Positions 22,524 to 36,483 of a stretch of 64,000 nucleotides of DNA are shown here, one piece after another. How positions within the stretch are numbered: position 1 is the stretch's first letter; the number at the start of each line of letters is the position of its first letter. The stretch is from positions 62,001 to 126,000 of the IMG/VR virus record IMGVR_UViG_3300047994_000374; one strand, 5' to 3'. The translations under genes were made by a program, and so were the position numbers. The notes beneath the pieces are model-generated. The model was not told the origin of the DNA, did not search any database, and was given only the letters and a program-made list of their open reading frames with translations.

Positions 22524-22542
22524 GTAATACAACAGGCAAAAG

Positions 22543-22886: not shown

Positions 22887-22944
22887 TGTATGTATATCCT
22901 TGTGTGTGCGTTAGATGGGAATTGTTTATTATTGGGACGAAGCT

Positions 22945-23220: not shown

Positions 23221-23255
23221 TGTATTAGCCTTTTCTTATTTTTAAATGGGATTGT

Positions 23256-23525
23256 TTAGCGGTAGAAGGTACAGTTAGGGAGAAGAGCTTTAGCAGCCTC
23301 ACGAGATGGCGCTCGAAAGTAAACCTCGACACCGTTTTCGTTCCAAGCGCAAAACATGTAGGAGCCTCTTACCCAGCCCCAATAAGCGCCACCTTGATCA
23401 TAGTCGCCGTTCAGAGGCATATAGCGAAGATGAACCTTGCCCATAAGCTCGGTTGGTTTACAGTCCGATTGACGACCCATAGGAGCGCCGTACTTACTAC
23501 TTACGTTTCGTTTGAAGGGGAGCAT
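23256..23525 (-). CDS. Hypothetical phage protein (YGAPMGR...YDxGGAYWG motif)
   Basis: Box 25 nt upstream. Confidence 0.75.
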   Translation of the reverse strand: MLPFKRNVSSKYGAPMGRQSDCKPTELMGKVHLRYMPLNGDYDQGGAYWGWVRGSYMFCAWNENGVEVYFRAPSREAAKALLPNCTFYR

Positions 23526-23587
23526 AGTATATGTTTATTCTTATTGGTAAATGGGAAGGGGTTTAGTTTTTTATTTGGCAAGGCTTA

Positions 23588-23622
23588 TGGCACAATAATC
23601 TCATATAGCAAAACTTGATCCA
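23588..23622 (-). promoter_or_regulatory. Sigma54-type promoter with mirror element
   Basis: Minus TGGATCAAGTTTTGCT; plus TGGCACAATAATCTC. Confidence 0.7.
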
Positions 23623-23639
23623 TATATTCAAAGGACAAT

Positions 23640-23669
23640 AAAAAAGCCCGACCATTACAGTCAGGCTTT
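23640..23669 (-). terminator. Intrinsic terminator
   Basis: A6-GCCCGACCATTACAGTCAGGCTTT. Confidence 0.7.
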
Positions 23670-23678
23670 AATTACAGT

Positions 23679-23969
23679 TCAGATGTCAAGGGCGCAAAAC
23701 TGTTTGACCAAGATCTTGTGCTTGTAAACTTTGCACCAAGGACCACGACGAAACCAGCGCCCCGGACCACCATAAGAATCATACCAGCCCGTCAAGTCTT
23801 GTGCCAATTCGTTACGATCGGTCTCTTCATCAATCGGACCATAAACCGCCTCGACCGCTTTACGATCGTAGATGGCAATATGAGTGCAGGATTCGCCATC
23901 ATCATTAACTGTGCCAGACTTCAAGGGATTAATTGAGGGAAGGTCGACATATTCTTTATCGTGGCTCAT
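23679..23969 (-). CDS. Hypothetical protein
   Basis: Box 24 nt upstream. Confidence 0.7.
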   Translation of the reverse strand: MSHDKEYVDLPSINPLKSGTVNDDGESCTHIAIYDRKAVEAVYGPIDEETDRNELAQDLTGWYDSYGGPGRWFRRGPWCKVYKHKILVKQFCALDI

Positions 23970-24004
23970 ATGATTACCTGTCCTTAATATTAAATGGGAA
24001 TTGT

Positions 24005-24295
24005 TTAGCGTCCAATTTCAGTAATAAACTTTAGAGCTTGGCGCTTGGTGCTGAATTGCTGAAACTTTGAAGCCGTGTCAATGCTACCATCGGCATTAGC
24101 AAAGCGGACCGTAAAGAGGCGAGGCGAGCCATCATCGAATCGTTCCGAGGTAATGAAGTAACGACCAAAGTAGATCGGATTATACACGATCGACTTGAAA
24201 AAGCGCATGGTGTCTTTTGAAAACCAGTGCCCGCCAGAAGCCTTGTTTGCTTCCTGAATTTCGCGCATCGTATTGTAAACTTTGGGAGTGGGCAT
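24005..24295 (-). CDS. Hypothetical phage protein (WFSxDTMRFF motif)
   Basis: Start reassigned to ATG 24295, 24 nt after the box. Confidence 0.75.
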   Translation of the reverse strand: MPTPKVYNTMREIQEANKASGGHWFSKDTMRFFKSIVYNPIYFGRYFITSERFDDGSPRLFTVRFANADGSIDTASKFQQFSTKRQALKFITEIGR

Positions 24296-24522
24296 AATAT
24301 TCTCGCTATTGTTTATTAAATGGGAATTAGAATGCCCAGTACTTACAGCGATCGCAAGTATCATCACCAGGGTTTTGCGCCCCTAGGGAATGCTTACAGT
24401 GTTTGCAGGTAGGCTTAGGAATAGGGAGCCCATAACTATCGATTGCTTTTTTCGGGATAAGAAGCATATCCTTTGATTGTCTAATGTGGTAAATGGGAAT
24501 TTGGATCCTTGGTTTGGGCTTG

Positions 24523-24557
24523 TGGCGAGCTTATTGCTTTTTGCAAACATCATACCA
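24523..24557 (-). promoter_or_regulatory. Face-to-face sigma54-type elements
   Basis: Minus TGGTATGATGTTTGCA; plus TGGCGAGCTTATTGCT. Confidence 0.75.
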
Positions 24558-24574
24558 TATAACCAACTGACAAT

Positions 24575-24607
24575 AAAAAACCCGATCCATTATAGACCGG
24601 GTTTTTT
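24575..24607. terminator. Bidirectional intrinsic terminator
   Basis: A6-CCCGATC...GACCGGG-T6. Confidence 0.7.
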
Positions 24608-24877
24608 ATGCGGAGCGCCAACCATTCCTTTAAGTCGTCGTCGTGAGCATTGCCAGCTTGACAAGTATATCGTTTTATTTACAGCCCCATCACAATATAG
24701 GTTAAGAGAAACATACTGATACAACAGAGCACGCCACTAAAGACTTCATGTGCCATCATTCGTTTATCGTCGTTCATGTTATTACCTATTGAGATTATTA
24801 AAAGCCCTCTAACCCAAAAGATGAGCTAGAAGGCTTTAAAGAGTTAGATAAGGGCGATCCTAGTAAATTACAGGGAA

Positions 24878-25114
24878 TTACAGGGTAGAATATACGCGAC
24901 CCTTGGACCATACGCCCATCATTGACCCATCGCTTTGCTTTACCCCGACCCATTGCCATTCTTGAACGAACGCTAAATGATCCGCGAGGCTTGCACATTC
25001 AAGAGCCACTCGTTTATCCTTACGAAAGTCTCCGATGCGTTCATGGGTCGCGAGCGAATAAACCCCGAACGTCCGACCTTTCAAAGCTTTAACCGTTTGC
25101 ATAGTTATCTCCAA
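24878..25114 (-). CDS. Hypothetical protein
   Basis: ORF track; box upstream (likely start 25102). Confidence 0.6.
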   Translation of the reverse strand: MEITMQTVKALKGRTFGVYSLATHERIGDFRKDKRVALECASLADHLAFVQEWQWVGVKQSDGSMMGVWSKGRVYSTL

Positions 25115-25215
25115 TGGTATAGATTAAATGGGAAATGTTTGTGGCATGTTTATAATCGATTCTACGCTTTTTAAGGCTCCACGATTATTAACTTTATACA
25201 ATAACTCGAAGCTAT

Positions 25216-25231
25216 TGCAATGATAGTGCCA
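25216..25231 (-). promoter_or_regulatory. Consensus sigma54-type promoter (no mirror element)
   Basis: Minus TGGCACTATCATTGCA = TGGCAC-N5-TTGCA. Confidence 0.75.
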
Positions 25232-25260
25232 CAGCTATCCTAAAACCTTTACTCCCCTAA

Positions 25261-25455
25261 TCAATTGTAGGAATGGGAAAGATTAAAAACTTCGACCTTG
25301 AGCTTTCGTTCTGAGAAGTCTGAATAGGTCTCTTCCAATTCCCCGACCTTTGATTCCCAATATTCCCGAACCTCATTATCAGATCCACCTCCACTGTAAA
25401 GGGTCAGGAGGTTCATCTTGATCTCTTGAGCGAGCTTCTTATAATTCGTTTTCAT
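25261..25455 (-). CDS. Hypothetical protein
   Basis: Start reassigned to ATG 25455, 24 nt after the box. Confidence 0.65.
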   Translation of the reverse strand: MKTNYKKLAQEIKMNLLTLYSGGGSDNEVREYWESKVGELEETYSDFSERKLKVEVFNLSHSYN

Positions 25456-25499
25456 GATATACCCTATGGTAAATGTTAAATGGGAATTGTTTATAGGGC

Positions 25500-25694
25500 T
25501 TAATCTTTTTCCGTGCCACGCAAAAGATTGACCGCGCTCCAAAACCCATCATCAAAGCCCGCAAGGATATCGGCGACCTGTTTCTTTTTGAGCAATCCTT
25601 TTTCTAAATGGGATTGCAATTGAAGCTCATAGTTCTTTAGTGTCTCTTCCCGGATTCTCAAAACCTCAGATCGTTTCATTAGAGTATCCTCCAC
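25500..25694 (-). CDS. Hypothetical protein
   Basis: ORF track; likely start 25679 with GGAGG upstream. Confidence 0.65.
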   Translation of the reverse strand: MEDTLMKRSEVLRIREETLKNYELQLQSHLEKGLLKKKQVADILAGFDDGFWSAVNLLRGTEKD

Positions 25695-26087
25695 GAATGA
25701 ATAGTAAATGGGAAATAAGGAAGTTAGGCGTAAAGATTACTTAGTGGCTTTATAACCAAGAGCCATGCCAGCGACGAAACTACACATAACCCATGTCACG
25801 ACAACCGAGCCGAGTGTAAAAGCAACGCCCTGGACAAAATGCGACGTGAGGCCTGCGAGCGACAATCCAACGAGTAGAGCGATAATGATCTTCATGATAT
25901 CTCCTATAGGTATTATTAAATGGGAATTGTTTACTTTGAATTCATGCGGCGGATAATAAACTGAAGGACCGCATTCGCTTGTTTCATCTGGTTGAGTTTT
26001 AAAACGAAACCGTTCTTTTCGATCTGGCTCATATCCTTTTCTTATTCTTTTGATGAAATGGGAAATGCTCGTGTGTGTGGGTCTATG

Positions 26088-26122
26088 TGGCTGGCTCTTT
26101 GCTTATTGCACAACCCATACCA
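26088..26122 (-). promoter_or_regulatory. Face-to-face sigma54-type elements
   Basis: Minus TGGTATGGGTTGTGCA; plus TGGCTGGCTCTTTGCT. Confidence 0.7.
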
Positions 26123-26138
26123 CTTATCCACTGGACAT

Positions 26139-26175
26139 AAAAAAATCCCGATCAACTTAATGACCGGGATCCTTT
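26139..26175 (-). terminator. Intrinsic terminator
   Basis: A7-TCCCGATCA...TGACCGGGAT. Confidence 0.65.
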
Positions 26176-26713
26176 ACCTCACACTCCCGCCAAACTCAAA
26201 ACCTTATTGATCTCTTTCTCATAATCAGCCGCGGCGCCTTTAAGCCCCACCTTCTTTGCGGTTGCTGCCTGTTTACGAAGAAGCTCAACTCGGATGAAAA
26301 CTTGTGCATTGGTCATAGTAGTAGTAATATCCTTTGGTTATTATTAAATGGGATTATGGTTTAGATTGCACTTTACAAAGACTTTACGTACTCTTTTGAT
26401 CCATCCTGGTATTCAATGATCAAGACTTTATTACGATAATCTTGCGTCCTCCACTTCTTAACTTCTTTTGAGTCAACCTTCATGCCCGGTTCAAAAGTTC
26501 CAGGTCGCACCATTCGATCCATGATATCCTCCAAGGTTAATGATTAAATGGGAAAATGATATTATGAAACCACTGTAATTTAAGTATAGAACTGTTGTCT
26601 TTAAAAACCGCCCCTACAATCGATTATTAAAAGAAAAAGATATACTGACAAGGATCAGATCAAAAGCTCGTCTCAATTCATTTTCGCGACTGGAAACGGC
26701 ATATACTAATAAT

Positions 26714-26899
26714 TCAGCGAGCCGTTACTTTACCCGTAAGACATGCGAGATCAAAGCGCTCCTGAGAAAACTTAGGATTGTCTTGTCGAAAGAATACGGA
26801 GAAGCTGTCAATCAAAAGTCGAAGCTCATCAGGGGAAGCTCCACACTTCTTATGGTTGTGGATGATAGAGGCTGCGGCGATCATATGAGTTTTCGTCAT
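26714..26899 (-). CDS. Small protein, duplicate of 27680-27868
   Basis: DNPKFSQxRFDLACLTGKVTAR shared. Confidence 0.75.
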   Translation of the reverse strand: MTKTHMIAAASIIHNHKKCGASPDELRLLIDSFSVFFRQDNPKFSQERFDLACLTGKVTAR

Positions 26900-26958
26900 T
26901 GTAGTTATTATGGGGTTATTGTATTAAATGGGAATTGGGTTATTAGGGATTATGGGTC

Positions 26959-26994
26959 TGGTATAGGGTTTGCTTAATTGCGAATACTATGCCA
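26959..26994 (-). promoter_or_regulatory. Face-to-face sigma54-type elements
   Basis: Minus TGGCATAGTATTCGCA; plus TGGTATAGGGTTTGCT. Confidence 0.75.
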
Positions 26995-27013
26995 TTTGAC
27001 TTTTTACAACTAT

Positions 27014-27041
27014 AAAGAGCCCATAAACAACAGGGCTCTTT
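27014..27041. terminator. Intrinsic terminator
   Basis: AAAGAGCCC...GGGCTCTTT. Confidence 0.65.
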
Positions 27042-27055
27042 ATATAAACCACGCT

Positions 27056-27643
27056 TCAATTACAAGGGCAGGTAACTTTCCTAAGAGAGCAGTATTGATC
27101 CAAGTCGGCACAAGTAGGAGAATGTGCCGCGGTAGGGTAATCGGGATTCATCAAAGTACCTGATCCGGTATGCTTCAATCCGCAAGCGTGCCCCGTTTCA
27201 TGAGCAATGCTAACCGAATACATATCAGAATCGACGTCTGACATATTCTGCAGATAGATAGTGGCTCCTATCTGATCTGGCGAATAAGAGTCATTATACT
27301 CGTAGGATTCAAGCTCACCTTGAACCGAAGTGTAGGCAATGGTCCCACTATCACCATGCGCCACAATGTTAGCCTTAGTATCTTTACGGATCACAATCGT
27401 TGACCAACCTACATGAGCCTCATTAGGCAAAGAAAAAGCCGGAACGATCGTATAACTAAAAACCGGACCATCTTTGAATTGTGACCAGGATGACATCTCT
27501 GATTCAATAACGCTCACCTCTTCCGAAGAAAAGTCGCTTGAGATCTGGACATCATAACCACCAGGCAATCCCGACTCAGCGGCACAACCAACTGAGCCAA
27601 TTGCGAAGGAGCCGAGAACCGTCATCATCAAGAGCGTTTTCAT
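27056..27643 (-). CDS. Lipoprotein metzincin (matrixin-like) metalloprotease
   Basis: Lipobox SVGC; HETGHACGLKH plus LMNP. Confidence 0.8.
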   Translation of the reverse strand: MKTLLMMTVLGSFAIGSVGCAAESGLPGGYDVQISSDFSSEEVSVIESEMSSWSQFKDGPVFSYTIVPAFSLPNEAHVGWSTIVIRKDTKANIVAHGDSGTIAYTSVQGELESYEYNDSYSPDQIGATIYLQNMSDVDSDMYSVSIAHETGHACGLKHTGSGTLMNPDYPTAAHSPTCADLDQYCSLRKVTCPCN

Positions 27644-27679
27644 TATTGATTAGCCTTTTAGTTATATTGAATATGGGAA

Positions 27680-27868
27680 TTAGCGAGCCGTAACTTTACC
27701 CGTAAGACATGCGAGATCAAACCGATCTTGGGAAAACTTCGGGTTATCGTTACGGAAGAGGGTAGAGAAGCTGTCGATCAAAAGTCGTACCTGTTTATCT
27801 GTTGCACCATTCTTCTTGTGGTTGTGGATGATGGCAGCGGCTTCAATCATAAACTTTTTGGTTAGCAT
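27680..27868 (-). CDS. Small protein, duplicate of 26714-26899
   Basis: High protein and DNA identity to 26714-26899. Confidence 0.75.
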   Translation of the reverse strand: MLTKKFMIEAAAIIHNHKKNGATDKQVRLLIDSFSTLFRNDNPKFSQDRFDLACLTGKVTAR

Positions 27869-27935
27869 GGTGGTAGTGATTGGGGTTTATTGTTTATTGA
27901 ATGGGAATTGTAATAGCTCTTTGGTTCTGGTATTG

Positions 27936-27971
27936 TGGATCGGATCATGTAATATAGTAAACACTATACCA
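27936..27971 (-). promoter_or_regulatory. Degenerate face-to-face sigma54-type elements
   Basis: Minus TGGTATAGTGTTTACT; plus TGGATCGGATCATGT; same position in the cassette as the others. Confidence 0.55.
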
Positions 27972-27988
27972 ACCATACGCAAGACAAT

Positions 27989-28018
27989 AAAAAGCCCCGA
28001 CCATTACAGTAGGGCTTT
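27989..28018 (-). terminator. Intrinsic terminator
   Basis: A5-GCCCCGACCATTACAGTAGGGCTTT. Confidence 0.65.
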
Positions 28019-28026
28019 AGAACAAT

Positions 28027-28230
28027 TCAATCGATCGTCAGTTCCCCCATGATCAATGCATTCTCCGTGCCAATAACCGTATCCTCTTCGCAAGCCTCGC
28101 AATGATAATCCTCAGCGTCCGGCTCGACACCACCGCAAGTGAATTCATTGCAGGTAGTACAATGCCCGTCGTATTCTTCGGCAGTAATCGTTTTCATGAT
28201 CATTATCCTTTTTATTATAATCACATACAT
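28027..28230 (-). CDS. Zinc-ribbon protein, paralog of 15360-15551
   Basis: EFTCGGVEPDAE...CEAC...GTENAL shared. Confidence 0.7.
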   Translation of the reverse strand: MYVIIIKRIMIMKTITAEEYDGHCTTCNEFTCGGVEPDAEDYHCEACEEDTVIGTENALIMGELTID

Positions 28231-28234
28231 ACAC

Positions 28235-28468
28235 TTACACGCATAGCTTACTTATAGTGGGGGAAAAGCTAAACACTTGAACCATCGTAGAAGACTTCAA
28301 TCCAAGGATCGTTTCAACTCCACTGGAACTTTTGGCAGCAATCTTGGTATAGTTTCCTTTATCCGTGGAGATGTCGCGAATGTCCTCCACCATATATTCC
28401 GTGCCAAGAAAGATAAAGCGGACCCCAACATCTAATTCAGAGCTTCGTCGGTTGAGCATCATAACCAT
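28235..28468 (-). CDS. Hypothetical protein
   Basis: Box upstream; first gene of a cassette. Confidence 0.65.
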   Translation of the reverse strand: MVMMLNRRSSELDVGVRFIFLGTEYMVEDIRDISTDKGNYTKIAAKSSSGVETILGLKSSTMVQVFSFSPTISKLCV

Positions 28469-28515
28469 ACCCTATTCTTATAAGTAATGGGAAACGAGAA
28501 ACTCTTTGGTGCGCG

Positions 28516-28551
28516 TGGTATAAGGATTGTATAATAGCAAAGCTCATGCCA
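28516..28551 (-). promoter_or_regulatory. Face-to-face sigma54-type elements
   Basis: Minus TGGCATGAGCTTTGCT; plus TGGTATAAGGATTGTA. Confidence 0.75.
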
Positions 28552-28567
28552 TACAATCAAACCACAT

Positions 28568-28594
28568 AAAAAGCCCGGCAATAAAAGCCGGGCT
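28568..28594 (-). terminator. Intrinsic terminator
   Basis: A5-GCCCGGC...GCCGGGCT. Confidence 0.75.
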
Positions 28595-28607
28595 CTCTTA
28601 TGCTACG

Positions 28608-28796
28608 CTAAAAGACGTTAGGTGCGCACCACAACTCTATAGTGTCGTTCAAGCTTTCGAGCGCGCGGGAACGATCCTGATCGGTAGATAACGGATCGTA
28701 TTGCGTCGCGTTATAGTGATTGATTGCGTCTAACAGATCTTCGGCTCCGGTCAAAAGCATTCTCCGCAAACGTATAACCTTCTCAGTTGGTTTCAT
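28608..28796 (-). CDS. Hypothetical protein
   Basis: ORF track; GGAG upstream. Confidence 0.6.
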   Translation of the reverse strand: MKPTEKVIRLRRMLLTGAEDLLDAINHYNATQYDPLSTDQDRSRALESLNDTIELWCAPNVF

Positions 28797-28823
28797 GTTA
28801 TCTCCACAATAGTTATAGCTTTT

Positions 28824-29018
28824 TCATGATTCTTCTGAATCCTTGAAGGATCCATCGCTCCACAAGAAAACACCCGTGTAAGTCATTGCTTGCCCATCAT
28901 TATCAACATCATCACCTTCCCCGTAGATAATCAATTGCCCATAATTATCTCGCTCCAAAGAAAGGGGATCCGCACCATCAAGAAGATCATTCAACTCTTT
29001 TTTCGTGTATGTTTTCAT
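28824..29018 (-). CDS. Small acidic protein, paralog of 11160-11342
   Basis: Start reassigned to ATG 29018 after the box and AGGAG. Confidence 0.7.
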   Translation of the reverse strand: MKTYTKKELNDLLDGADPLSLERDNYGQLIIYGEGDDVDNDGQAMTYTGVFLWSDGSFKDSEES

Positions 29019-29071
29019 GGCATCTCTCCTAATCTTTTGAGGTAAATGGGAATAGCTTTTATTAGGGTAAC

Positions 29072-29106
29072 CGGCTTGTTTTTTGCTATTAGCTATAATC
29101 ATACCC
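29072..29106 (-). promoter_or_regulatory. Face-to-face sigma54-type elements
   Basis: Minus GGGTATGATTATAGCT; plus CGGCTTGTTTTTTGCT. Confidence 0.6.
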
Positions 29107-29123
29107 ACTATCTTTTGCCCAAT

Positions 29124-29159
29124 AAAAAAGCCGATCCCTTTCGAGACCGACTTCTTTTC
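29124..29159 (-). terminator. Intrinsic terminator
   Basis: A6-GCCGATC...GACCGAC-TTCTTTT. Confidence 0.55.
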
Positions 29160-29400
29160 TTTCAATCCTCCGAATGAAAGCGAGCGAAACAGTTTTCCCA
29201 ACCTTGCCAGTAATTGGCTTCGTAGTCCCCGTTATCGTCAGGAAACCGCGGCTCAACGCCATCAAGGCAATCGGTGTAACCTTGGTTGTATGCTTCGCGA
29301 TTCATCTTGACGGTTTTCATGATGGTATTCCTTTTGAGAGGGGAGGGAAAAAGAAACCGGGTAACTACCTTGAACTTTTATAAGAAATGGGATGAGCCGA

Positions 29401-29562
29401 TCAATAGCCTAACCAAGCCAGAAACTCACTCGCCTCATACTACTCATGATCCCCCATCTCACAAAGAAACTCCGCCATGTCGCAACAATGGTCCTTGATC
29501 TCTTTCATGGCGCGGGTCTTTGAGATGCGAAGGTCTTTGGCTGATTCGGAGTAGGTGGGCAT
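29401..29562 (-). pseudogene. Small gene with internal TAG (MPTYSESAK...GDHE*YEASEFLAWLGY*)
   Basis: ATG 29562 is 24 nt from a box; the frame continues plausibly past the TAG at 29440-29442. Confidence 0.45.
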
Positions 29563-29769
29563 AATAATAGGGCTAAAGAATAAGGAATGGGATAAGGACA
29601 ACATAAGATAACCTCCGCTTCGTTCACCCAATAGAGAATAATAGAGTGAAATGTAGGTAAGGAGGGGATAAAGGGATTGGAGCTGAATAAGAATTGTAAA
29701 TGATTGTAAAGTTTTATTATAGTTTTTTATATTGTAAATGATTGTAAATAAGTTATTATATTGTTTGAA

Positions 29770-29805
29770 TGGTATGTATAATGCTTTATTGCATGGGGTG
29801 TGCCA
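29770..29805 (-). promoter_or_regulatory. Outermost face-to-face sigma54-type elements
   Basis: Minus TGGCACACCCCATGCA; plus TGGTATGTATAATGCT. Confidence 0.7.
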
Positions 29806-29862
29806 GGCGGGAAAACTGGGGCAGATTGTCATGCGCGGCAGAGATAAGGCTCCCAAATCGAC

Positions 29863-29976
29863 TTAAAATCATAAAAACAAACTAATAAACTAAATTAAAA
29901 TCATAAAAACAAACTAATAAACTAAATTAAAATCATAAAAACAAACTATATTCTAAACTAATAAACTATATTCTAA
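29863..29976. repeat. Tandem repeats: 32-bp unit x2.7 plus a 14-bp direct repeat x2
   Basis: TTAAAATCATAAAAACAAACTAATAAACTAAA at 29863, 29895, partial 29927; AAACTATATTCTAA at 29943 and 29963. Confidence 0.9.
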
Positions 29977-30000
29977 CTTAAAACCAATCAACTCAAAATA

Positions 30001-30033
30001 CTACTACTACTACTACTACTATTATTATTATTA
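30001..30033 (-). repeat. (CTA)7(TTA)4 microsatellite, reading as TAAx4 TAGx7 in frame with the upstream CDS
   Basis: Read directly from the sequence. Confidence 0.9.
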
Positions 30034-30360
30034 AAGAAAAGCATCCATACTAATAACCCTCTTTAAAAGCTTTAACCCTTCCTCTGGATCATATTGTTTA
30101 TTCTCTTCTTTATAAACCAAATTATAGAGCTTATAAACAACTATCTCACTTACGCCCTTATACTCCCAATAAATTACTTCCCAACGAACCTTTATTTTAT
30201 TATCCTCTTTATCCTCAATAACAATGTTAATTTCAAACTTATCACTATATTTATCTGCATAGGGATAATAGTAAAAAGCATGGGTTTTATTTTTATGAAC
30301 CCCTATACATTTCATCTCCCTTACTTCTACTGAATACTTACCACACACTGGACATTTCAT
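30031..30360 (-). CDS. Zn-finger/xxFL array protein
   Basis: MKCPVC...C...H; ends MDAFL. Confidence 0.8.
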   Translation of the reverse strand: MKCPVCGKYSVEVREMKCIGVHKNKTHAFYYYPYADKYSDKFEINIVIEDKEDNKIKVRWEVIYWEYKGVSEIVVYKLYNLVYKEENKQYDPEEGLKLLKRVISMDAFL

Positions 30361-30612
30361 TTGATTTATACCTGGTTATTCTTTCTATATTGGGGCTTAA
30401 ATAAATCGACAATGGGAGTGAAAATAAATAGAGAAATCTACTAATAAAGTTGGATATTTTTGATTAATATTTGTGTTATTATTTGATTGTTTTAAAGCCT
30501 ATTTATTATATTTATTTGGCGGGAATTAGAAAAATAAGCTTACTTTGATGTTTGGGTCCGAAAGGCGAAAACATTATGAGCCGATTTAAAAAGACAAAGT
30601 TGGATATAGGGC

Positions 30613-30924
30613 TCAAATAAACCCCTGCAACCTAACCACACGATTCAACAGAATGTATGCTTCTTTGGGTGTATAGAATTTTTTGTCATGATAGAGCGTT
30701 CTCCCCGCATGAAGCACATCAATTTGTGTCGCATAAGTGTTTATTCTTTTTGGCTCGCTGTCAAAAGAATAAGAAGTTAACATTTGAAACTGAACGATAC
30801 CGCTGCTATTTTCTAAATGATAACGAATCCACATTGAATCTCCAACGCGTTCAAAATAATATGGAGCATGTCGACATATTTTATTATCCATAACCACCGC
30901 TTGATCGCAAATTGGACAATTCAT
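30613..30924 (-). CDS. Zn-finger/xxFL array protein
   Basis: MNCPIC; ends LQGFI. Confidence 0.8.
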   Translation of the reverse strand: MNCPICDQAVVMDNKICRHAPYYFERVGDSMWIRYHLENSSGIVQFQMLTSYSFDSEPKRINTYATQIDVLHAGRTLYHDKKFYTPKEAYILLNRVVRLQGFI

Positions 30925-31265
30925 AAAAAGGACCTTAATTTATCCACCTTAGATAAGAGCTGAATAGCCTCTTCATGGGCATATACATTGGCATCAGTAT
31001 AAATAATCTCCTGCCCATCAATAACTCGATCATCCAGAAGATAAATGATACTTACCCACCCGGAACTACTATCTATTCGGTTGGACTTTAATGGATGAGC
31101 CCCTGCTTCGAACCTATATTTATTATTTGAGCCGGCATTTTCAAAAAACCAAATGGTATATCCGAGTTCCAAATAATCATAGAAAAGATGCGATGGACCT
31201 GCTTCCTCACATCGCCAGCCCGAGTAAGTCTTGAAGCACGGATCATAACAAATTGGGCAGTTCAT
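30921..31265 (-). CDS. Zn-finger/xxFL array protein
   Basis: MNCPIC; ends LRSFL. Confidence 0.8.
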   Translation of the reverse strand: MNCPICYDPCFKTYSGWRCEEAGPSHLFYDYLELGYTIWFFENAGSNNKYRFEAGAHPLKSNRIDSSSGWVSIIYLLDDRVIDGQEIIYTDANVYAHEEAIQLLSKVDKLRSFL

Positions 31266-31297
31266 AAGAAAATCTGTAATTTAATCATTATTGTTAT

Positions 31298-31603
31298 TTA
31301 TGTGAAGCTATGCAATTTAATAAAACGATTCAGAAGTATTAACGCTTGAACCGGATCCCTTTTATTTCCTTGGTCTTCATAAATAAGTGTTTTAACTCCG
31401 AGGGAAAGATCACTACTACATTCTATTTTTGTCCTTGAATAAGGGGGAATGGGAACATCAATTGTGATAATGCTGTTATTCCCAATGATTTTAGAAATTA
31501 CAAAAGAATAACTGTAAAGATAAAATCCTCCGTCATCATGAAGGCAAGTCTTATGCCTTGTTATTATTTTTAAGCAAAACGGGCATATCATCGGCGGATT
31601 CAT
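31298..31603 (-). CDS. Zn-finger/xxFL array protein
   Basis: CPFC; ends LHSFT. Confidence 0.8.
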   Translation of the reverse strand: MNPPMICPFCLKIITRHKTCLHDDGGFYLYSYSFVISKIIGNNSIITIDVPIPPYSRTKIECSSDLSLGVKTLIYEDQGNKRDPVQALILLNRFIKLHSFT

Positions 31604-31923
31604 AGGAGCGCCTGCATCTTCATAAATCTCTTTAAAAGAGCAAAGCTTTCGGGAACACTATGGTGACAATTATCTTTATAAATCCAATCGGACCCAGCTT
31701 TATTCTTAATTCTAGTTCCATTGAATTCGCACTCAAGCCTCCAATAATGTTCTCGCGACGATTCTATAGACTTTTGAAAGAACAAAAATACTTGAATGGA
31801 ATAATAAGTTGAATTACAACTTTTATAAAGGTCTGTTCTATGATTATATTCTATGGTTTGTCCCTGGCAAATACTTCCTATGCTTTTTTTCTCCATCTCT
31901 TTACCACAAACAGGACAGTTCAT
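31600..31923 (-). CDS. Zn-finger/xxFL array protein
   Basis: MNCPVC; ends MQALL. Confidence 0.8.
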   Translation of the reverse strand: MNCPVCGKEMEKKSIGSICQGQTIEYNHRTDLYKSCNSTYYSIQVFLFFQKSIESSREHYWRLECEFNGTRIKNKAGSDWIYKDNCHHSVPESFALLKRFMKMQALL

Positions 31924-32246
31924 AGGAACGCCTTTATATTTATGAGCTTATAAATAAATGGGAGAAGCGCGGCATCTGCTTCTCGAAACCTATCTTCTTC
32001 ATAGATTGTTTTCCCTACAGTAAATCTATCATTATTATCGAAGGGCGGCATTAACTGACTTAAGTAGCCTCCAGAGCCGCGAGGATCGCACCAACTATGC
32101 CATCTTACGTTTTCTTTAAGGATGGCGAGCGTGAATTCAACGAGCCCGTGTTGGAAAAGATGATCCTGCTCATGGCAATGAAAACGTGTAACAATTTTCG
32201 ATTTGCTTTCGTTTTTTAGGATTTTATTACAGAAGGGACAGTTCAT
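31920..32246 (-). CDS. Zn-finger/xxFL array protein
   Basis: MNCPFC; ends IKAFL. Confidence 0.8.
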   Translation of the reverse strand: MNCPFCNKILKNESKSKIVTRFHCHEQDHLFQHGLVEFTLAILKENVRWHSWCDPRGSGGYLSQLMPPFDNNDRFTVGKTIYEEDRFREADAALLPFIYKLINIKAFL

Positions 32247-32316
32247 TTGGGGAATGGGTGGCGGAGATTTAAAATGGGTTGGGGGTGGAATAATTATGGT
32301 GATGATGCTGTAAAAT

Positions 32317-32634
32317 TTATAAGAAAGCTTGCAAGGTAGTAGTAAGTTTTTTTAAGATTTCCATTGCCTTATAACAATCATAATAAGAATCGTTCGCCTG
32401 AAATACAATTGTATGATCGGATTTATAAGTTCCTATATGAAAACGAAAAGCTCCAGAATCATAAATGTCCATGAAAATTTTATATGCGTTGGGCAAGTAA
32501 ATTGAATAGGTCGTGTCATTATAAAAATAAAAATTATGCCCTTTATTGATATTTTTTATACACATATATTTAGCGGCTGTCCCGATAATATTTTGTTTAG
32601 CAATTAATAGTTTATTGCAGACCGGGCAATTCAT
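32317..32634 (-). CDS. Zn-finger/xxFL array protein
   Basis: MNCPVC; ends LQAFL. Confidence 0.8.
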   Translation of the reverse strand: MNCPVCNKLLIAKQNIIGTAAKYMCIKNINKGHNFYFYNDTTYSIYLPNAYKIFMDIYDSGAFRFHIGTYKSDHTIVFQANDSYYDCYKAMEILKKLTTTLQAFL

Positions 32635-32942
32635 AAGAAAGCTCCAAGCTTTTTTACTCGTTTTATAAAGTCATAAGACTGTTGGTATGGAACATGATCT
32701 TGGCTGTTAAAAACAAGATTTCCGTCGGCCATAACTTGTGTGGATTCCCGGGTAAATGACCACTTTTCTATTTTATTAATAGGTCTATAAAAAATAATAC
32801 GATAAGAATTGGGCTCGTCGGATGAAACAAATGTGGGCCAAATTGTAACATCATGTCCAGTAATACCACCACTGTAATTTAAACATCGAATGATTAATGG
32901 ATCATATGCTAATTTTTGATTGCAAATAATACACTTATTCAT
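32631..32942 (-). CDS. Zn-finger/xxFL array protein
   Basis: CIIC; ends LGAFL. Confidence 0.8.
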   Translation of the reverse strand: MNKCIICNQKLAYDPLIIRCLNYSGGITGHDVTIWPTFVSSDEPNSYRIIFYRPINKIEKWSFTRESTQVMADGNLVFNSQDHVPYQQSYDFIKRVKKLGAFL

Positions 32943-33214
32943 AAAAATCCTTTTAATTTTGCAAAACGATCAATGTAGGACATGATTTGATCAAGTGGAA
33001 TGAAATCGTTCTTTATTGTAATTATTTCGGAACTGTTATCCCCGTAGGACATCTTTGTGTCAGATTTATAATCGGATGTAATAAAATAACAACCACATAA
33101 TCTCAAATCATAGCCCTCTGGATCCATATAAACTGTGTGATTAAACACATTCCATCTACAAATAAAAAATTCTTCTTCTTTAATTAAAGGTTTATAACAG
33201 ATTGGGCAATTCAT
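32939..33214 (-). CDS. Zn-finger/xxFL array protein
   Basis: MNCPIC; ends LKGFL. Confidence 0.8.
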   Translation of the reverse strand: MNCPICYKPLIKEEEFFICRWNVFNHTVYMDPEGYDLRLCGCYFITSDYKSDTKMSYGDNSSEIITIKNDFIPLDQIMSYIDRFAKLKGFL

Positions 33215-33537
33215 AAGAAAGCCCTTAACTTCATCATCCTCTCAACAAATGCCATGGAATCTGTTAATGGAACAAACATATTAAAATCTTGATGTGTTGT
33301 GCATTGTCCAATGTTATATGTAAACGATGTATATCCTGATGGGTGATTGTTATCTTTGAATGAGTAAAATGAAATGGAGTTTGAAATACCTGTCGATTTC
33401 TGAGTTTGAATAATGTAATCATCCTCTTGATAATAAGTAAAAAAATGTCGAATGGGACCGCCCTCACAACGAGTGGTTTTCAATCGATCGGTCATTAGCG
33501 GGAGGTGGCAAACGGGACAATTTATTTGCTTGCTCAT
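33211..33537 (-). CDS. Zn-finger/xxFL array protein
   Basis: CPVC; ends LRAFL. Confidence 0.8.
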   Translation of the reverse strand: MSKQINCPVCHLPLMTDRLKTTRCEGGPIRHFFTYYQEDDYIIQTQKSTGISNSISFYSFKDNNHPSGYTSFTYNIGQCTTHQDFNMFVPLTDSMAFVERMMKLRAFL

Positions 33538-33845
33538 AGAAATCCTTGCAATTTGATAATTCTTTCAAATAATTTCATACCTTCTTGAATATCATAATTG
33601 ACGTCAGTTTTATAAATTTGATCCAACCACCAGTCAGCGGCTTCGTCCTTAATATAAATTATAGTTGGCATATTTATTGGTCTTGGAGGATTAGGGGCAA
33701 TGGAAATAAATCGATATCCCTTTTGCTCAATGGAATAGGAGTGATCATTAAATATCTCAAAACAATGGTCATTTCGAAAGCATTGAAATATTCGATGCAA
33801 ATCAAAAGTATTATTATTTCCTGAATTACATACAGGACACTTCAT
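33534..33845 (-). CDS. Zn-finger/xxFL array protein
   Basis: MKCPVC; ends LQGFL. Confidence 0.8.
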   Translation of the reverse strand: MKCPVCNSGNNNTFDLHRIFQCFRNDHCFEIFNDHSYSIEQKGYRFISIAPNPPRPINMPTIIYIKDEAADWWLDQIYKTDVNYDIQEGMKLFERIIKLQGFL

Positions 33846-34150
33846 AGGAAGGATTGCAATTTCGCCATACGCTTGAGAAGGGTATGGGCTTCTTTAAGAG
33901 AACGCAATTGGTTATCCGTATAAATCGTTTTGGGGCGATTTCCATTCAGAGTATAGGTATATATCTCTGTTCGAATCGATTCTTCCTTTATTAGCTTTGT
34001 ATGCCCTGAAATCATAGTTAGTGTTGCATGGTCTCTTAAAATATAAAAGTGATCGGAATAATAACATGTGGAATGATCAGAATTATAGCATGTCCACTTG
34101 GTTTCGGTAAGTCGTTGTACGAGATTTTTATTGCAAAATGGACAGTTCAT
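33842..34150 (-). CDS. Zn-finger/xxFL array protein
   Basis: MNCPFC; ends LQSFL. Confidence 0.8.
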   Translation of the reverse strand: MNCPFCNKNLVQRLTETKWTCYNSDHSTCYYSDHFYILRDHATLTMISGHTKLIKEESIRTEIYTYTLNGNRPKTIYTDNQLRSLKEAHTLLKRMAKLQSFL

Positions 34151-34162
34151 TGGGCTTATCGT

Positions 34163-34571
34163 TCATAGGAACCCTTTTATGTTATTTATTCTATTCAAGA
34201 AATCATTTACTTCTTCGGGTGGAGTATATTTTTTGACACTAACTATTTCATATTTCATATTTCATATAATATTTATTTTTATCTTCATTTTCACCATAAA
34301 CTTTTGTTATTGGACCATTATAGTTAATATATTTTGGATTATCAAAAGATACTATTCCGACGGAACTGTAAATTTTAAATGTTTTGCGAGTTGGCCATAA
34401 ATTATAATATCTAATATTTTTATCTAAATTCATCCAAACTTCAAAAAGATGCTCGCTCACATTGGAAAGATGTGGAAATAATAATCTATCTTTTTGGGCA
34501 AAAGAACAGGAGAGAAATCTTGCAGGATCTCCTTTTGTTTCATGCTTACAAATGGGACAAAGTATTTTCAT
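34163..34571 (-). pseudogene. Zn-finger/xxFL array member with frameshift
   Basis: CPIC start; the family C-terminus ...NRINNIKGFL* (stop 34163-34165) lies in another frame. Confidence 0.65.
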
Positions 34572-34852
34572 AGAAAGCTTCTTAATTTCATGAACCGTTC
34601 AATATGGGACTTGATTTCAGTAATGGGAATAAATTCTTTTGTATAAATAGGATCGGTTCCAGGATTGTGATATACATCGACGTTATAAAATGACGTAATT
34701 GGGATATCAGCATTTTTATCAAAAGCATCAATTGTAAGAATAATACTTTCAATTATAATTCGATAACCATCCTTATAAACTTCAACGTCATGTCCGTTTG
34801 TTTGATGGATATTTTTCTTATTAAATTTTTGATTGCAAATAGGACATTTCAT
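34568..34852 (-). CDS. Zn-finger/xxFL array protein
   Basis: MKCPIC; ends LRSFL. Confidence 0.8.
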   Translation of the reverse strand: MKCPICNQKFNKKNIHQTNGHDVEVYKDGYRIIIESIILTIDAFDKNADIPITSFYNVDVYHNPGTDPIYTKEFIPITEIKSHIERFMKLRSFL

Positions 34853-35160
34853 AAGAGCGCTTTCATATTGATTAATCGTTTAAGAAGAATATACCCGTCT
34901 TTAGGATGAGGAGTGTTATCATCTTGGTAAATAAGATTCTTTTCATCATAAACATATGTATTTTGACTGGCTTCACTAATAACGGTTTCAAACTTATATT
35001 GATGAGCGGTATATGGAACTTTGCCAGATTCTTCCTTAAAAAGCCAAATGGTATAGCCTAACCCTTCATAATCGATAAACAAATGATCATCAGTGGAGTG
35101 ACATTTAAATTGAATACTGGAATCCGAAGTGCTTTGATTGCATACCGGACAGAACATCAT
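34849..35160 (-). CDS. Zn-finger/xxFL array protein
   Basis: CPVC; ends MKALL. Confidence 0.8.
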   Translation of the reverse strand: MMFCPVCNQSTSDSSIQFKCHSTDDHLFIDYEGLGYTIWLFKEESGKVPYTAHQYKFETVISEASQNTYVYDEKNLIYQDDNTPHPKDGYILLKRLINMKALL

Positions 35161-35537
35161 AAGAAAGCCTGCAATTTCATAATTCCTTTAAATCGCTCTA
35201 TTGTTTCTTTATTTAATTTTTGAAAGGGTAATTCGCACACAAACTCACGCTCGTAACCAAACAAAAGTCCCCAACCACTATCATCATCCAATAATTTACT
35301 TACTTTAATACAGTTTTCTTTTTTATTCCCTTCAAAACGAAACATTTCTTTTTCATAAAACTCCACCGTATAATCATCTTCTTGATGGAGCGTAACAGCC
35401 GATTGAAGCGCATCGTATGGGACTGCTGTTGAAAATTCCTTCCAATAACGAATAGAGTGTGATTTATTTTTATCACACTCCACGCTATCTTCGAACAATG
35501 AAACTTGTAGAGGCGCATTGCATATAGGACAATTCAT
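35157..35537 (-). CDS. Zn-finger/xxFL array protein
   Basis: MNCPIC; ends LQAFL. Confidence 0.8.
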   Translation of the reverse strand: MNCPICNAPLQVSLFEDSVECDKNKSHSIRYWKEFSTAVPYDALQSAVTLHQEDDYTVEFYEKEMFRFEGNKKENCIKVSKLLDDDSGWGLLFGYEREFVCELPFQKLNKETIERFKGIMKLQAFL

Positions 35538-35848
35538 AGAAAAGTTCTTAATTTAATTATCCTTTTAAGAAATTTAACGGCATTATCATCAGGTGGCATA
35601 TAAACTTTACCCTCATAAACTAATGAAGTTATAGAAAGCTCTGGCGTATGAATTTCTGTAGCTTGTCGCGCGGATGATTTATAAGAATAAAGAATATATC
35701 TAATATTATTTTCAAATAATCTAATTTCATATCCAGTCTGGTCTTGATATTTATAAGAAAATGGTTGAAATTGATGACCATCCGCTATACAATTATCATA
35801 AGGATAAAGTGCCGCTTTTTGGCAAATGGGACATGCAGCATAACTCAT
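35534..35848 (-). CDS. Zn-finger/xxFL array protein
   Basis: CPIC; ends LRTFL. Confidence 0.8.
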   Translation of the reverse strand: MSYAACPICQKAALYPYDNCIADGHQFQPFSYKYQDQTGYEIRLFENNIRYILYSYKSSARQATEIHTPELSITSLVYEGKVYMPPDDNAVKFLKRIIKLRTFL

Positions 35849-36160
35849 AAGAATGCCTTAAGATTTAAAATTTTATAAACGAATGGCATAAGCGTATGAT
35901 CGGGGGGGTCTTGAGATGGCGTCTGTATAAAAGTGACCCCAATCAATAGCTGATGACTCTCCATGATTCACCCCCGTTTCTATTGTGAATTTGCCGTGAT
36001 CTGATCGAATATAAATCTTTAGACCGTTTTCTTTATTTTTGATATAAACCACATAATCATATAGACGATCTATTGGAGGGCTATAAAATGCATGCTCATC
36101 TTCAATAAAACAAGTATCTTGCTCTTTTATAATTTTTTTACGGCAGACTGGGCATTTCAT
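35845..36160 (-). pseudogene. Zn-finger/xxFL array member frameshifted near a C7 tract
   Basis: MKCPVC; ...YKILNLKAFL* in a shifted frame; G7 at 35902-35908 on plus. Confidence 0.65.
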
Positions 36161-36483
36161 AAAAAAGCCCTTATGTTATATAATTTCTGAATGATGTTTG
36201 GTAAATTTTCATCCCAAGGTAGTGGTTCGGACTCATGAATTAATTTTTTGTTGGCTTGAGAGTATCTTATTTTGTGATAGATTTCTGTTTTTTGATTATG
36301 TCCGTATTTACCAATAATAAGATAATCACTAAATTTCAAATTGACTTGATATTTCTCAATGCGTTTGTCATAGGGATCAAGTTGAATGAATGTAGTATGA
36401 TCATTTTTAATGCATTGAAAATAAGAAGATCGATTTGTGGCTCGATATTCTGGCAATTCAATTTGACAAACAATACATTTCAT
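36157..36483 (-). CDS. Zn-finger/xxFL array protein
   Basis: MKCIVC; ends IRAFL. Confidence 0.8.
   Translation of the reverse strand: MKCIVCQIELPEYRATNRSSYFQCIKNDHTTFIQLDPYDKRIEKYQVNLKFSDYLIIGKYGHNQKTEIYHKIRYSQANKKLIHESEPLPWDENLPNIIQKLYNIRAFL

What the first reader, a model, noticed from the sequence alone, without database searches (positions are those of the whole stretch)
29631..30035. Abrupt G/C-skew flip with iteron-like repeats at the edge of the early region: candidate origin or genome end
Seen: 29631-29783 on + has a single C and the direct repeat ATTGTAAATGATTGTAAA (29693, 29731). 29861-30035 has no G for 175 nt and carries 32-bp tandem repeats. The outermost dual sigma54 element lies between them and fires away into the early genes. 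Gene style and base composition change across this point. Inference: a packaging terminus or terminal-repeat boundary (first-injected end), or a replication origin.
Basis: partly seen in the sequence, partly recalled or inferred. Interest (0 to 1): 0.65.

Follow-up and report, generated by a model that had tools for sequence, protein, structure and literature searches.

The report
Conserved head of megaphage early region
This odd 400-base stretch is the conserved starting point of the early-gene block of a 394-kb uncultured phage, where host-type sigma-54 promoters fire into a GC-rich gene region, and it may also be where the packaged chromosome begins, though that is not proven.

Summary
29631-29783 holds one C. 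29861-30035 holds no G and is the longest G-free run in the 394-kb phage contig. It carries a perfect 32-bp x2.7 tandem repeat.

Between the tracts lie a palindromic sigma-54-type promoter pair (29770-29805) and a 55-bp GC-rich core (29806-29860). The site is the sharp edge of a 37-kb, 42% GC block of small genes; the rest of the genome is 33-35% GC.

Three related megaphage contigs (portal about 70% identical) have the same junction: an invariant ATTTGGGAG(S)C at the GC edge, sigma-54 palindromes clustered just inside, and GC decaying with distance (Spearman -0.66 to -0.92). The repeats themselves are not conserved.

The skew flip is best read as two back-to-back G-poor leaders of divergent transcription.

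Unitig depth falls from 68-74x to 40x at the junction in the likely source run, and similarly in one other sample. That fits a terminal-repeat boundary, as does the SPO1-like layout. GC bias fits the depth too, and a third sample shows no step.

No initiator gene, DnaA box or conserved iteron supports an origin. Misassembly is excluded.

Verdict: a conserved early-region hub, possibly the chromosome end.

The parts
29440..29606 (-). First small ORF of the early block (55 aa from the ATG at 29606, GGAGG 7 nt upstream; an alternative ATG lies at 29563).
   Evidence: Read from the sequence. No homologue was sought.
29631..29783 (-). C-poor tract on the + strand. It would be the G-less (1 G), A/U/C leader of the leftward transcript. 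It contains four ATTGTAAA units arranged as two 18-bp direct repeats (29693-29710 and 29731-29748).
   Evidence: The leader role is inferred from the promoter position. Leaders after the other dual elements are also G-poor.
29770..29805 (.). Outermost 'dual' sigma-54-type palindrome. The + half is TGGTATGTATAATGCT (29770-29785). The - half is TGGCACACCCCATGCA (29805-29790). The two -12 elements face each other, 4 nt apart. The - half reads into the early genes.
   Evidence: GG and GC dinucleotides sit at the canonical 10-nt spacing. Nine of 13 such palindromes in the genome lie in 22319-29805, whereas shuffled genomes give 1-4.
29806..29860 (-). GC-rich conserved core. On the minus strand: ATTTGGGAGCC (29858-29848), then CTGCC, GCGCATGACAAT (29836-29825), and GCCCCAG..TTTTCC. 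A possible inverted repeat TGGGAGS-N26-S'CNCCCA is present.
   Evidence: ATTTGGGAG(S)C is invariant at the GC edge of four genomes. One compensatory change supports the inverted repeat. The core is unique in each genome. The second hits in G001 and G002 lie in ordinary or coding sequence without any junction features.
29861..30035 (+). G-free tract. It holds the 32-bp x2.7 perfect tandem repeat (29863-29948), a 12-bp repeat (29943-29976), (TAC)7 (29999-30021) and (TAT)4. Any rightward transcript from the hub would be G-less here. The tract ends at the stop codon of the last array gene.
   Evidence: The equivalent flank in G003 and G008 is a G-poor 330-418-nt leader of outward-reading protease genes. 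The repeat sequence itself is not conserved.
30031..37604 (-). AT-rich side: 23 tandem ~100-aa CxxC paralogs, transcribed towards the junction.
   Evidence: The same family sits next to the junction in G002 and G008.
1..29860 (-). GC-rich early block. It continues to about window -7400 (genome 54.6 kb). It holds about 80 small genes, mostly single units with their own terminator and a YTCCCATTYA box about 30 nt before the ATG.
   Evidence: Forty of the 52 boxes in the genome lie here, all on the minus strand.
22319..28551 (-). Eight further face-to-face sigma-54-like palindromes: 22319-22354, 22489-22523, 23588-23622, 24523-24557, 26088-26122, 26959-26994, 28516-28551 and 29072-29106 (just beyond this range). 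A single strict half-site lies at 25216-25231. Six palindromes plus the 25231 half-site were examined in detail; most sit 15-20 nt after an upstream rho-independent terminator.

Best explanation
The stretch is the hub at the head of the phage's early ('host-takeover'-type) region.

Shown by sequence and comparison:
- A roughly 55-bp GC-rich core (29806-29860) is conserved in related megaphages and sits exactly at a sharp GC edge.
- Next to the core is the outermost of nine palindromic sigma-54-type promoter pairs.
- The inward half of that pair reads leftwards into a 37-kb block of small genes, each with its own promoter-like signals and terminator.
- GC in that block is highest at this edge and decays with distance.
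- The two strange tracts are what any transcript leaving the hub would carry. Leftward RNA is G-less for about 150 nt and rightward RNA is G-less for 175 nt. That is why the + strand flips from C-free to G-free.

Inferred:
- G-less, C-containing leaders are unstructured. They would favour translation start or Rho loading.
- The 32-bp (three helical turns) repeat lies -84 to -169 from the predicted start, where sigma-54 enhancers or bends normally sit.

Inferred more weakly:
- The core also marks the fixed end of the packaged chromosome, i.e. the boundary of a terminal repeat, with the early block as the terminal redundancy as in SPO1. The early promoters would then sit on the first DNA to enter and read inwards.
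For: Composition and repeats.

Sigma-54-type sites:
- Seven strict matches, all on the minus strand, six of them in the block.
- Nine of 13 palindromes lie within 7.5 kb of the edge, against 1-4 in shuffled genomes.
- The unit structure is constant: terminator, palindrome, box, ATG.

Conservation:
- G002, G003 and G008 show the same GC edge: 0.41 to 0.56, 0.39 to 0.60 and 0.43 to 0.54 within 1 kb.
- They have the same motif at the edge and the same promoter cluster just inside.
- GC decays with distance, with Spearman r of -0.66, -0.87 and -0.92.
- G-poor outward leaders occur in G003 and G008.

For the chromosome-end part:
- Logan unitig depth is 74.1 and 68.5 left of the site and 39.8 right of it. 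The two-copy repeat unitig reads 78.6, about 39 per copy.
- Another sample gives 6.6 and 6.1 against about 2-6.
- The contig ends overlap by 184 nt, so the assembly is circular-looking, as a collapsed repeat would be.
- The TerL C-extein's nearest cultured kin are Andromeda-like Bacillus phages. Their terminases were reported as weakly SPO1-like, the long-direct-repeat type (PMC4197329).
- The nearest cultured relative by portal, phage G, is non-permuted with a GC-richer terminal repeat (PMC12484599).
- The map read from this point runs early, small genes, replication, then structural genes.
Against: - No raw reads were available, so no read-start pile-up could be seen.
- GC bias reproduces the depth numbers. 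Unitig 2 at 68.5 equals 0.83 x 74 plus 0.17 x 40, as expected if its AT-rich sixth is covered like the AT side.
- The third sample, X5, shows a ratio near 1.
- The second edge of any 2x region was not tested. The left edge of the block has no special sequence.
- None of 67 related IMG/VR records is classed as having terminal repeats, and four contigs read straight through the junction.
- No sigma-54 activator (PF00158) or sigma-54 gene was found in the phage, and the host is unknown.
- The palindromes could be operators of a dimeric regulator rather than promoters.
- The TerL similarity is only 26%, and it does not resemble phage G's TerL.
Confidence: 0.45

Rival explanations
1. The site is a transcription hub only. 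It is the divergent control region at the head of the early regulon, and the packaged DNA is permuted or ends elsewhere. The depth step is GC bias. The GC sawtooth reflects selection on the earliest-expressed genes, for example matching host composition or escaping silencing of AT-rich DNA.
For: - All promoter, leader and conservation evidence applies equally.
- In G002, G003 and G008 protease genes are transcribed away from the core, so the core sits in a classic divergent intergenic region.
- On the outward strand the G003 core is a canonical sigma-54 promoter, TGGCACgactcTTGCc.
- The depth numbers fit GC bias, and X5 shows no step.
- Contigs read through the site.
Against: - It does not explain why an 11-nt motif upstream of the first promoter is invariant and sits exactly at the GC edge, while promoter spacing around it varies (N3 versus N7).
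- A 1.85-fold bias for a 10% GC difference is large.
- The sharp-edged, one-sided GC decay suggests a polar process that starts at a fixed point.
Confidence: 0.35
2. The site is a replication origin of the promoter-plus-AT-rich-unwinding-element type, as in T4 oriF/oriG or the T7 primary origin. The direct repeats would be initiator or primosome sites.
For: - A promoter is followed by an AT-rich 100-nt patch (GC 0.24-0.35) in all four genomes, three of them with short direct repeats.
- The detrended cumulative GC skew of the contig has its broad minimum at genome 83-100 kb, which includes the site at 91.86 kb.
Against: - The repeats differ completely between relatives.
- No initiator gene, helicase loader or DnaA box is nearby. 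Replication genes lie more than 200 kb away.
- The skew minimum is at 83.5 kb, and the slope changes track gene orientation.
- G-less transcripts are poor R-loop formers. This point is an inference.
Confidence: 0.1
3. The site is the edge of a horizontally acquired or mobile island inserted into the small-gene region. The core would be an end or attachment sequence of that element.
For: - The block has distinct GC and gene style.
- CxxC paralogs lie on both sides of the block.
- Block gene content is hardly shared between relatives: four genes with G002, none with G003 or G008.
Against: - No integrase or transposase was seen among the proteins scanned.
- The core occurs once per genome and has no partner at the other, diffuse edge.
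- The same junction is conserved in phages whose blocks differ, so the boundary is older than the contents.
- M10-like protease paralogs occur both inside and outside the block.
Confidence: 0.05
4. The site is an assembly artefact, a chimeric join at a low-complexity repeat.
For: The tandem repeats and microsatellites break Logan unitigs here.
Against: - An independent assembler gives overlapping unitigs that tile across 29863-30042 in the same order.
- Both flanks belong to one 394-kb contig.
- The same architecture recurs in three other phage contigs from other samples.
Confidence: 0.01

Closest known systems
Terminal redundancy and host-takeover module of Bacillus phage SPO1 (also the T5 pre-early repeats)
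   Same: Both have a block of many small early genes in short units, read by host polymerase from clustered strong promoters and placed at one end of the map. Here unitig depth is about 1.8x over the block. The TerL has distant kin reported as weakly SPO1-like. The SPO1 module layout is from my own knowledge. Its long direct repeats are cited in PMC4197329.
   Different: This block is at least 37 kb, against 13 kb in SPO1. The promoters look sigma-54-type and palindromic rather than sigma-A type. The block has its own GC level with a gradient. No physical ends have been demonstrated.
Phage G terminal repeat (127 bp, 43% GC in a 30% GC, non-permuted genome; PMC12484599)
   Same: Phage G is the nearest cultured relative by portal (33% identity) and capsid protein. 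It has a short GC-rich element at a fixed genome end, which resembles the GC-rich 55-bp core flanked by AT-rich tracts seen here.
   Different: The motif is absent from NC_023719. The TerL proteins are unrelated by BLAST. Phage G shows no GC-rich early block in what I read.
XacN1 66-kb direct terminal repeats (PMC5852040)
   Same: It is a precedent for tens-of-kb terminal repeats in a roughly 385-kb jumbo phage.
   Different: The XacN1 repeats carry 56 tRNA genes. Here there is one tRNA. No relationship was tested.
Sigma-54 (RpoN) dependent promoters with upstream enhancer or bend
   Same: The sites show GG/GC at -24/-12 and the consensus TGGCAC-N5-TTGCW. The phased 32-bp repeat lies at -84 to -169, where enhancers or IHF bends sit. 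Positions are my calculation, and the enhancer geometry is established knowledge.
   Different: The promoters come as face-to-face palindromes 4 nt apart, which I have not seen described. No activator gene is present in the phage. No paper describing sigma-54 early promoters in jumbo phages turned up in the library searches.
T7 left end and T4 oriF/oriG
   Same: T7 has early host-polymerase promoters at the entering end, with arrays of short repeats beside the terminal repeat. In T4 oriF/oriG a promoter is followed by an AT-rich element. Both descriptions are from my own knowledge.
   Different: There is no sequence or protein kinship, and the scale and promoter class are very different.

Membership tests
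Sigma-54-dependent promoter | GG at -24 and GC at -12, ten bases apart, within TGGCAC-N5-TTGCW | tested here: met
   29805-29790 reads TGGCACACCCCATGCA. There are seven strict matches in the genome, all on the minus strand, six of them in the early block, where about 1.5 would be expected.
Sigma-54-dependent promoter | An AAA+ enhancer-binding activator and its upstream binding sites | tested here: inconclusive
   PF00158 is not found in the phage, so a host activator would be needed. The 32-bp repeats lie at enhancer distance but are unique to this site.
Sigma-54-dependent promoter | Sigma-54 present and transcripts starting about 12 nt after the GC | not testable with these tools
   The host is unknown. 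No sigma-54 gene is in the phage. No RNA data were available.
Long direct terminal repeat boundary (SPO1/T5/XacN1 type) | Two-fold read depth over the repeat, with a sharp step at each end | tested here: inconclusive
   One step is seen: 68-74x falling to 40x in X1, and about 6.3x falling to about 3.5x in X3. X5 gives a ratio near 1. The second edge was not examined, and GC bias is not excluded.
Long direct terminal repeat boundary (SPO1/T5/XacN1 type) | Pile-up of read starts or molecule ends at the boundary | not testable with these tools
   All runs were held as contigs only.
Long direct terminal repeat boundary (SPO1/T5/XacN1 type) | Large terminase groups with known long-repeat packagers | tested here: inconclusive
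   The C-extein is 26% identical to Andromeda-like Bacillus phages, which are reported as only weakly SPO1-like. No hit to SPO1, T5 or phage G appeared among the matches examined.
Iteron-type replication origin | Repeated initiator sites that are conserved among relatives | tested here: not met
   The repeats are present here. Relatives have different short repeats or none at the same place.
Iteron-type replication origin | An adjacent initiator gene or DnaA boxes | tested here: not met
   Neighbouring ORFs are tiny unknowns or CxxC paralogs. No DnaA box lies in 29600-30060.
Iteron-type replication origin | An extremum of cumulative GC skew at the site | tested here: inconclusive
   The detrended curve has a broad minimum over genome 83-100 kb, with the lowest point at 83,458. 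The site is at 91,858. The curve follows gene orientation.
Known RNA family | A match to an Rfam covariance model | tested here: not met
   No match at E up to 1 in 29000-30600.

The most novel reading that the evidence does not exclude
The core is the fixed chromosome start of an undescribed clade of soil and moss megaphages. Their first-entering DNA would be a GC-graded, host-mimicking early region read by host sigma-54 polymerase from face-to-face double promoters. A GC sawtooth anchored on a genome end would be a new compositional signature of entry or expression order in phage genomes.
Probability: 0.3. Interest if true: 0.8.

Novelty: new variant of a known kind. Interest (0 to 1): 0.62.

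Why it matters
Megaphages are known almost only from metagenomes. Where their chromosomes start and how infection is launched are both open questions.

This site offers a conserved, easily recognised landmark: an 11-nt motif, a GC step and a cluster of sigma-54-type palindromes. It could orient such genomes and point to their earliest genes.

If the promoters are real, these phages launch infection through the host's sigma-54 polymerase, which normally needs an ATP-driven activator. That dependency did not turn up in my literature searches, and it could be tested. It would also narrow the host range to sigma-54-bearing bacteria.

The one-sided GC gradient, up to 30 percentage points over about 100 kb in relatives, is a striking pattern that needs an explanation. 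Candidates are order of entry, escape from silencing of AT-rich DNA, and turnover of acquired genes.

Tried and rejected
- Another genetic code for the small-gene block: table 11 fits, and no stop-codon reassignment is needed.
- Near or distant DNA matches in cultured phages: none.
- Relatives through the first early-block protein, the last array protein and the array alignment: nothing, or no usable pattern.
- Exact junction 24-mer in viral and metagenome contigs: no hit. Own records may be hidden.
- Scan of viral contigs for motif plus CTGCC: 45 hits, but only G002 and G008 are real junctions and the rest are chance.
- Second copies of the motif in G001 and G002: they lie in ordinary sequence without junction features, so they are chance.
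- Terminal repeats in relatives: no head-tail repeats in G002, G003 or G008, and all 48 smaller records are 'linear' fragments. No junction lies at the contig ends of G001 or G004-G010.
- TerL search with four Pfam families and phage G gp1: blank. It was found with PHROGs.
- TerL intein: the first TerL search hit the intein only. I then searched the C-extein alone by reference. The joined extein was not built, so that step was left out.
- Phage G terminal repeat sequence: no supplement is held, and the newer genomes are not in the collection. The end region of NC_023719 was looked at without result.
- Host inference from the RF2 gene: only 37-47% identity to scattered phyla, so uninformative.
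- Rfam: nothing. The sigma-70 and terminator scan is at shuffle level.
- Left edge of the block: no special sequence.
- The large protein searches, structure prediction and complex prediction were not used, because no claim here rests on them.

Full report
**What the window is.**
The window is bases 62,001-126,000 of a single 394,192-bp IMG/VR virus contig from a moss metagenome. The contig ends overlap by 184 nt with one mismatch, so the assembly closes on itself although it is filed as linear.

The phage is a distant relative of Bacillus phage G. The portal is 33% identical, and the capsid protein is 51% identical over its C-terminal half. It belongs to a large uncultured clade: 126 IMG/VR loci have portals about 70% identical.

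Almost all genes lie on the minus strand, apart from a block at genome 100-135 kb. Table 11 reads the genome well.

**The observation.**
See the observation check for the numbers. The G-free run (175 nt) and the C-free run (100 nt) are each the longest of their kind in the genome and lie 77 nt apart.

Between them are two features:
- A face-to-face pair of sigma-54-type sites: TGGTATGTATAATGCT on + at 29770-29785, and TGGCACACCCCATGCA on - at 29805-29790.
- A 55-bp segment of 56% GC.

**The surroundings.**
Left of the site lies a 37-kb block, from genome 54.6 to 91.9 kb, of 42-44% GC. The rest of the genome is 33-35% GC.
- The right edge of the block is sharp, within 300 nt. The left edge is gradual and has no special sequence.
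- Inside the block, genes are small, spaced, and mostly single units. Outside it, on both sides, genes overlap by 4 nt in arrays.
- Right of the site are 23 tandem ~100-aa CxxC paralogs. Members of the family also lie left of the block, so the block sits inside the small-gene part of the genome.

Two signals mark the block:
- Strict sigma-54 consensus matches: seven in the genome, all on the minus strand, six in the block. Most are halves of 35-36-bp palindromes whose -12 elements face each other 3-4 nt apart. Nine of the 13 such palindromes in the genome lie in window 22319-29805, whereas shuffled genomes give 1-4.
- A box YTCCCATTYA about 30 nt before start codons: 40 of 52 copies lie in the block, all on the minus strand.

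The typical unit is terminator, palindrome, about 24 nt, box, about 30 nt, ATG. The element in the finding is the outermost palindrome. Unlike the others it has no terminator upstream and no box nearby.

**Relatives.**
Three large related contigs have the same junction: G002 (481 kb), G003 (447 kb) and G008 (203 kb). Each shows the following.
- A GC step within 1 kb, from 0.41 to 0.56, 0.39 to 0.60 and 0.43 to 0.54 respectively.
- A dense cluster of the same palindromes in the first few kb of the GC-rich side, reading into it.
- The CxxC array on the AT-rich side, seen in G002 and G008.

At the exact edge all four genomes carry ATTTGGGAG(G/C)C. It is followed by (C)TGCC and a CCC(A/C)CA..TTTT segment, while the flanks do not align. 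G000 and G002 also share GCGCAYGACAAT.

A 7-bp inverted repeat, TGGGAGS-N26-S'CNCCCA, is possible, with one compensatory change. Four sequences are too few to call it.

GC on the block side falls steadily with distance from the edge: Spearman r is -0.66 in G000, -0.87 in G003 over 126 kb, and -0.92 in G002. The pattern is therefore a sawtooth, with a cliff at the motif and a long slope behind it.

Block gene content is hardly shared: four genes with G002, none with G003 or G008. The conserved thing is the architecture, not the cargo.

**What the two tracts are.**
In G002, G003 and G008 the AT side begins with secreted protease genes transcribed away from the junction. Their leaders are 214-418 nt long, and G-poor in G003 and G008. 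The first transcript into the block also has a G-poor leader.

In G000 the proteases lie elsewhere, at 39004-40297, and the array abuts the junction. What remains is a 175-nt G-free spacer.

The skew flip is therefore best read as two G-poor leaders placed back to back at a point of divergent transcription. It is extreme in G000, moderate in G003 and G008, and absent in G002.

The repeats inside the tracts are not conserved. They are unlikely to be essential iterons. The roles I suggest for them are inference only:
- A phased enhancer or bend upstream of the sigma-54 site.
- Unstructured leaders that favour translation or Rho loading.

**Is it a chromosome end?**
The one read-level test allowed gave contigs only.
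- In the probable source run, unitigs left of the site have k-mer depth 74.1 and 68.5, and the 7.6-kb unitig to the right has 39.8. The two-copy repeat unitig has 78.6, about 39 per copy.
- A second sample gives 6.6 and 6.1 against about 2-6.
- A third, very shallow sample gives about equal depth on both sides.

A collapsed terminal repeat predicts such a step. GC bias also predicts it, because the two sides differ by 10% GC. The 68.5 value is what one expects if the AT-rich sixth of that unitig is covered like the AT side.

Supporting hints for an end:
- The SPO1-like design: an early gene block with clustered host-type promoters at one end of a sensibly ordered map.
- The TerL (986 aa with an intein). 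Its C-extein's nearest cultured kin are Andromeda-like Bacillus phages (26% identity), which were reported as weakly SPO1-like (PMC4197329).
- Phage G is non-permuted with a GC-richer 127-bp terminal repeat (PMC12484599).
- XacN1 shows that 66-kb terminal repeats exist (PMC5852040).

Against an end:
- No related record carries end repeats.
- Contigs read through the site in four assemblies. This is expected for a repeat boundary, but equally for no end at all.
- The TerL is unlike phage G's.

I put the chromosome-end reading at about 0.4-0.45 and the hub-only reading at about 0.35.

**Origin.**
The detrended cumulative GC skew has a broad minimum over genome 83-100 kb, with its lowest point at 83,458. 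The site at 91,858 lies on that plateau. However, the curve follows gene orientation.

No initiator gene, DnaA box or conserved repeat is present, and replication genes are far away. I give this reading about 0.1.

**Artefact.**
Excluded. An independent assembler tiles across the repeats in the same order, and the architecture recurs in other samples.

**Limits.**
- The sigma-54 assignment rests on motif matches only.
- The phage has one sigma-70-family gene, no sigma-54 gene and no PF00158 activator.
- The host is unknown.
- The palindromes might be operators for a dimeric regulator, with the box as the real promoter.
- The spliced TerL was not assembled. Only the C-extein was searched, by reference.
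- Literature searches found no description of sigma-54 early promoters or of a GC sawtooth in jumbo phages. The library is partial.

Noticed in passing
window 30031-37604 (-); also genome 45,994-47,429, 372,836-374,245 and others; L102:11676-17156; L119:15312-18283: A large family of ~100-aa proteins with an N-terminal CxxC...C..H zinc-ribbon-like motif and a C-terminal 'KLxAFL/LLFS' tail. There are 23 tandem copies at about 21% mutual identity, about 20 more elsewhere in the genome, and similar arrays next to the junction in G002 and G008. No Pfam family matches.
   Followed up: partly
window 22319-29805: The sigma-54-type sites come as face-to-face palindromes: two -24/-12 elements with their -12 ends 3-4 nt apart. 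Most sit right after a bidirectional-looking terminator. G002, G003 and G008 have the same design. Why a promoter would be mirrored is unexplained.
   Followed up: partly
window -4376 to 29052, minus strand: The box YTCCCATTYA (best form AATTCCCATTTAAT) lies about 30 nt before the start codons of about 40 genes of the GC-rich block. G002 has GGCTCCCATTCA in the same place. It could be a promoter -10 region or an RNA signal. On the outward strand the junction core reads GCCTCCCAAAT, which is similar.
   Followed up: partly
genome 280,071-283,031 (-) = L013:14071-17031; window 56855-59041 (+); genome 254,947-257,149: The large terminase carries an intein at about aa 185-547. The IMP dehydrogenase also carries an intein (Hint and intein-splicing domains). 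The major capsid gene is split into two ORFs around a 308-aa ORF, probably an intron with an endonuclease.
   Followed up: partly
window 44874-45962 (-) and 43780-44859 (-): A phage-encoded RF2-type peptide release factor (SPF and GGQ motifs), only 37-47% identical to bacterial ones, sits next to a GIY-YIG homing endonuclease. The genome nevertheless reads well under the standard code.
   Followed up: partly
G002 420-481 kb and 1-20 kb; G003 1-126 kb: In relatives the GC-rich region is far larger and steeper than here: 0.60-0.68 at the edge, falling to 0.34-0.40 over 60-120 kb. IMG/VR files both records as 'provirus', perhaps because this region looks like host DNA.
   Followed up: partly
window 27056-27643, 3679-4320, 39004-39687, 39689-40297: Four secreted or lipoprotein-like M10/zincin metalloprotease paralogs (HExxH). 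In relatives they sit beside trypsin-like and C39-like peptidases directly at the junction.
   Followed up: no
genome 240-250 kb: A 48-52% GC block consists of collagen-like tail-fibre genes. It would serve as the GC-matched control for any depth test of the terminal-repeat idea.
   Followed up: no
genome 1-184 and 394,009-394,192: The contig ends repeat each other over 184 nt with one A/C mismatch. The record is effectively a closed circle, or a collapsed concatemer or repeat, although it is labelled linear and 92% complete.
   Followed up: yes
window 4424-4499 (-): A single tRNA-Leu(TAA) lies inside the GC-rich block.
   Followed up: no
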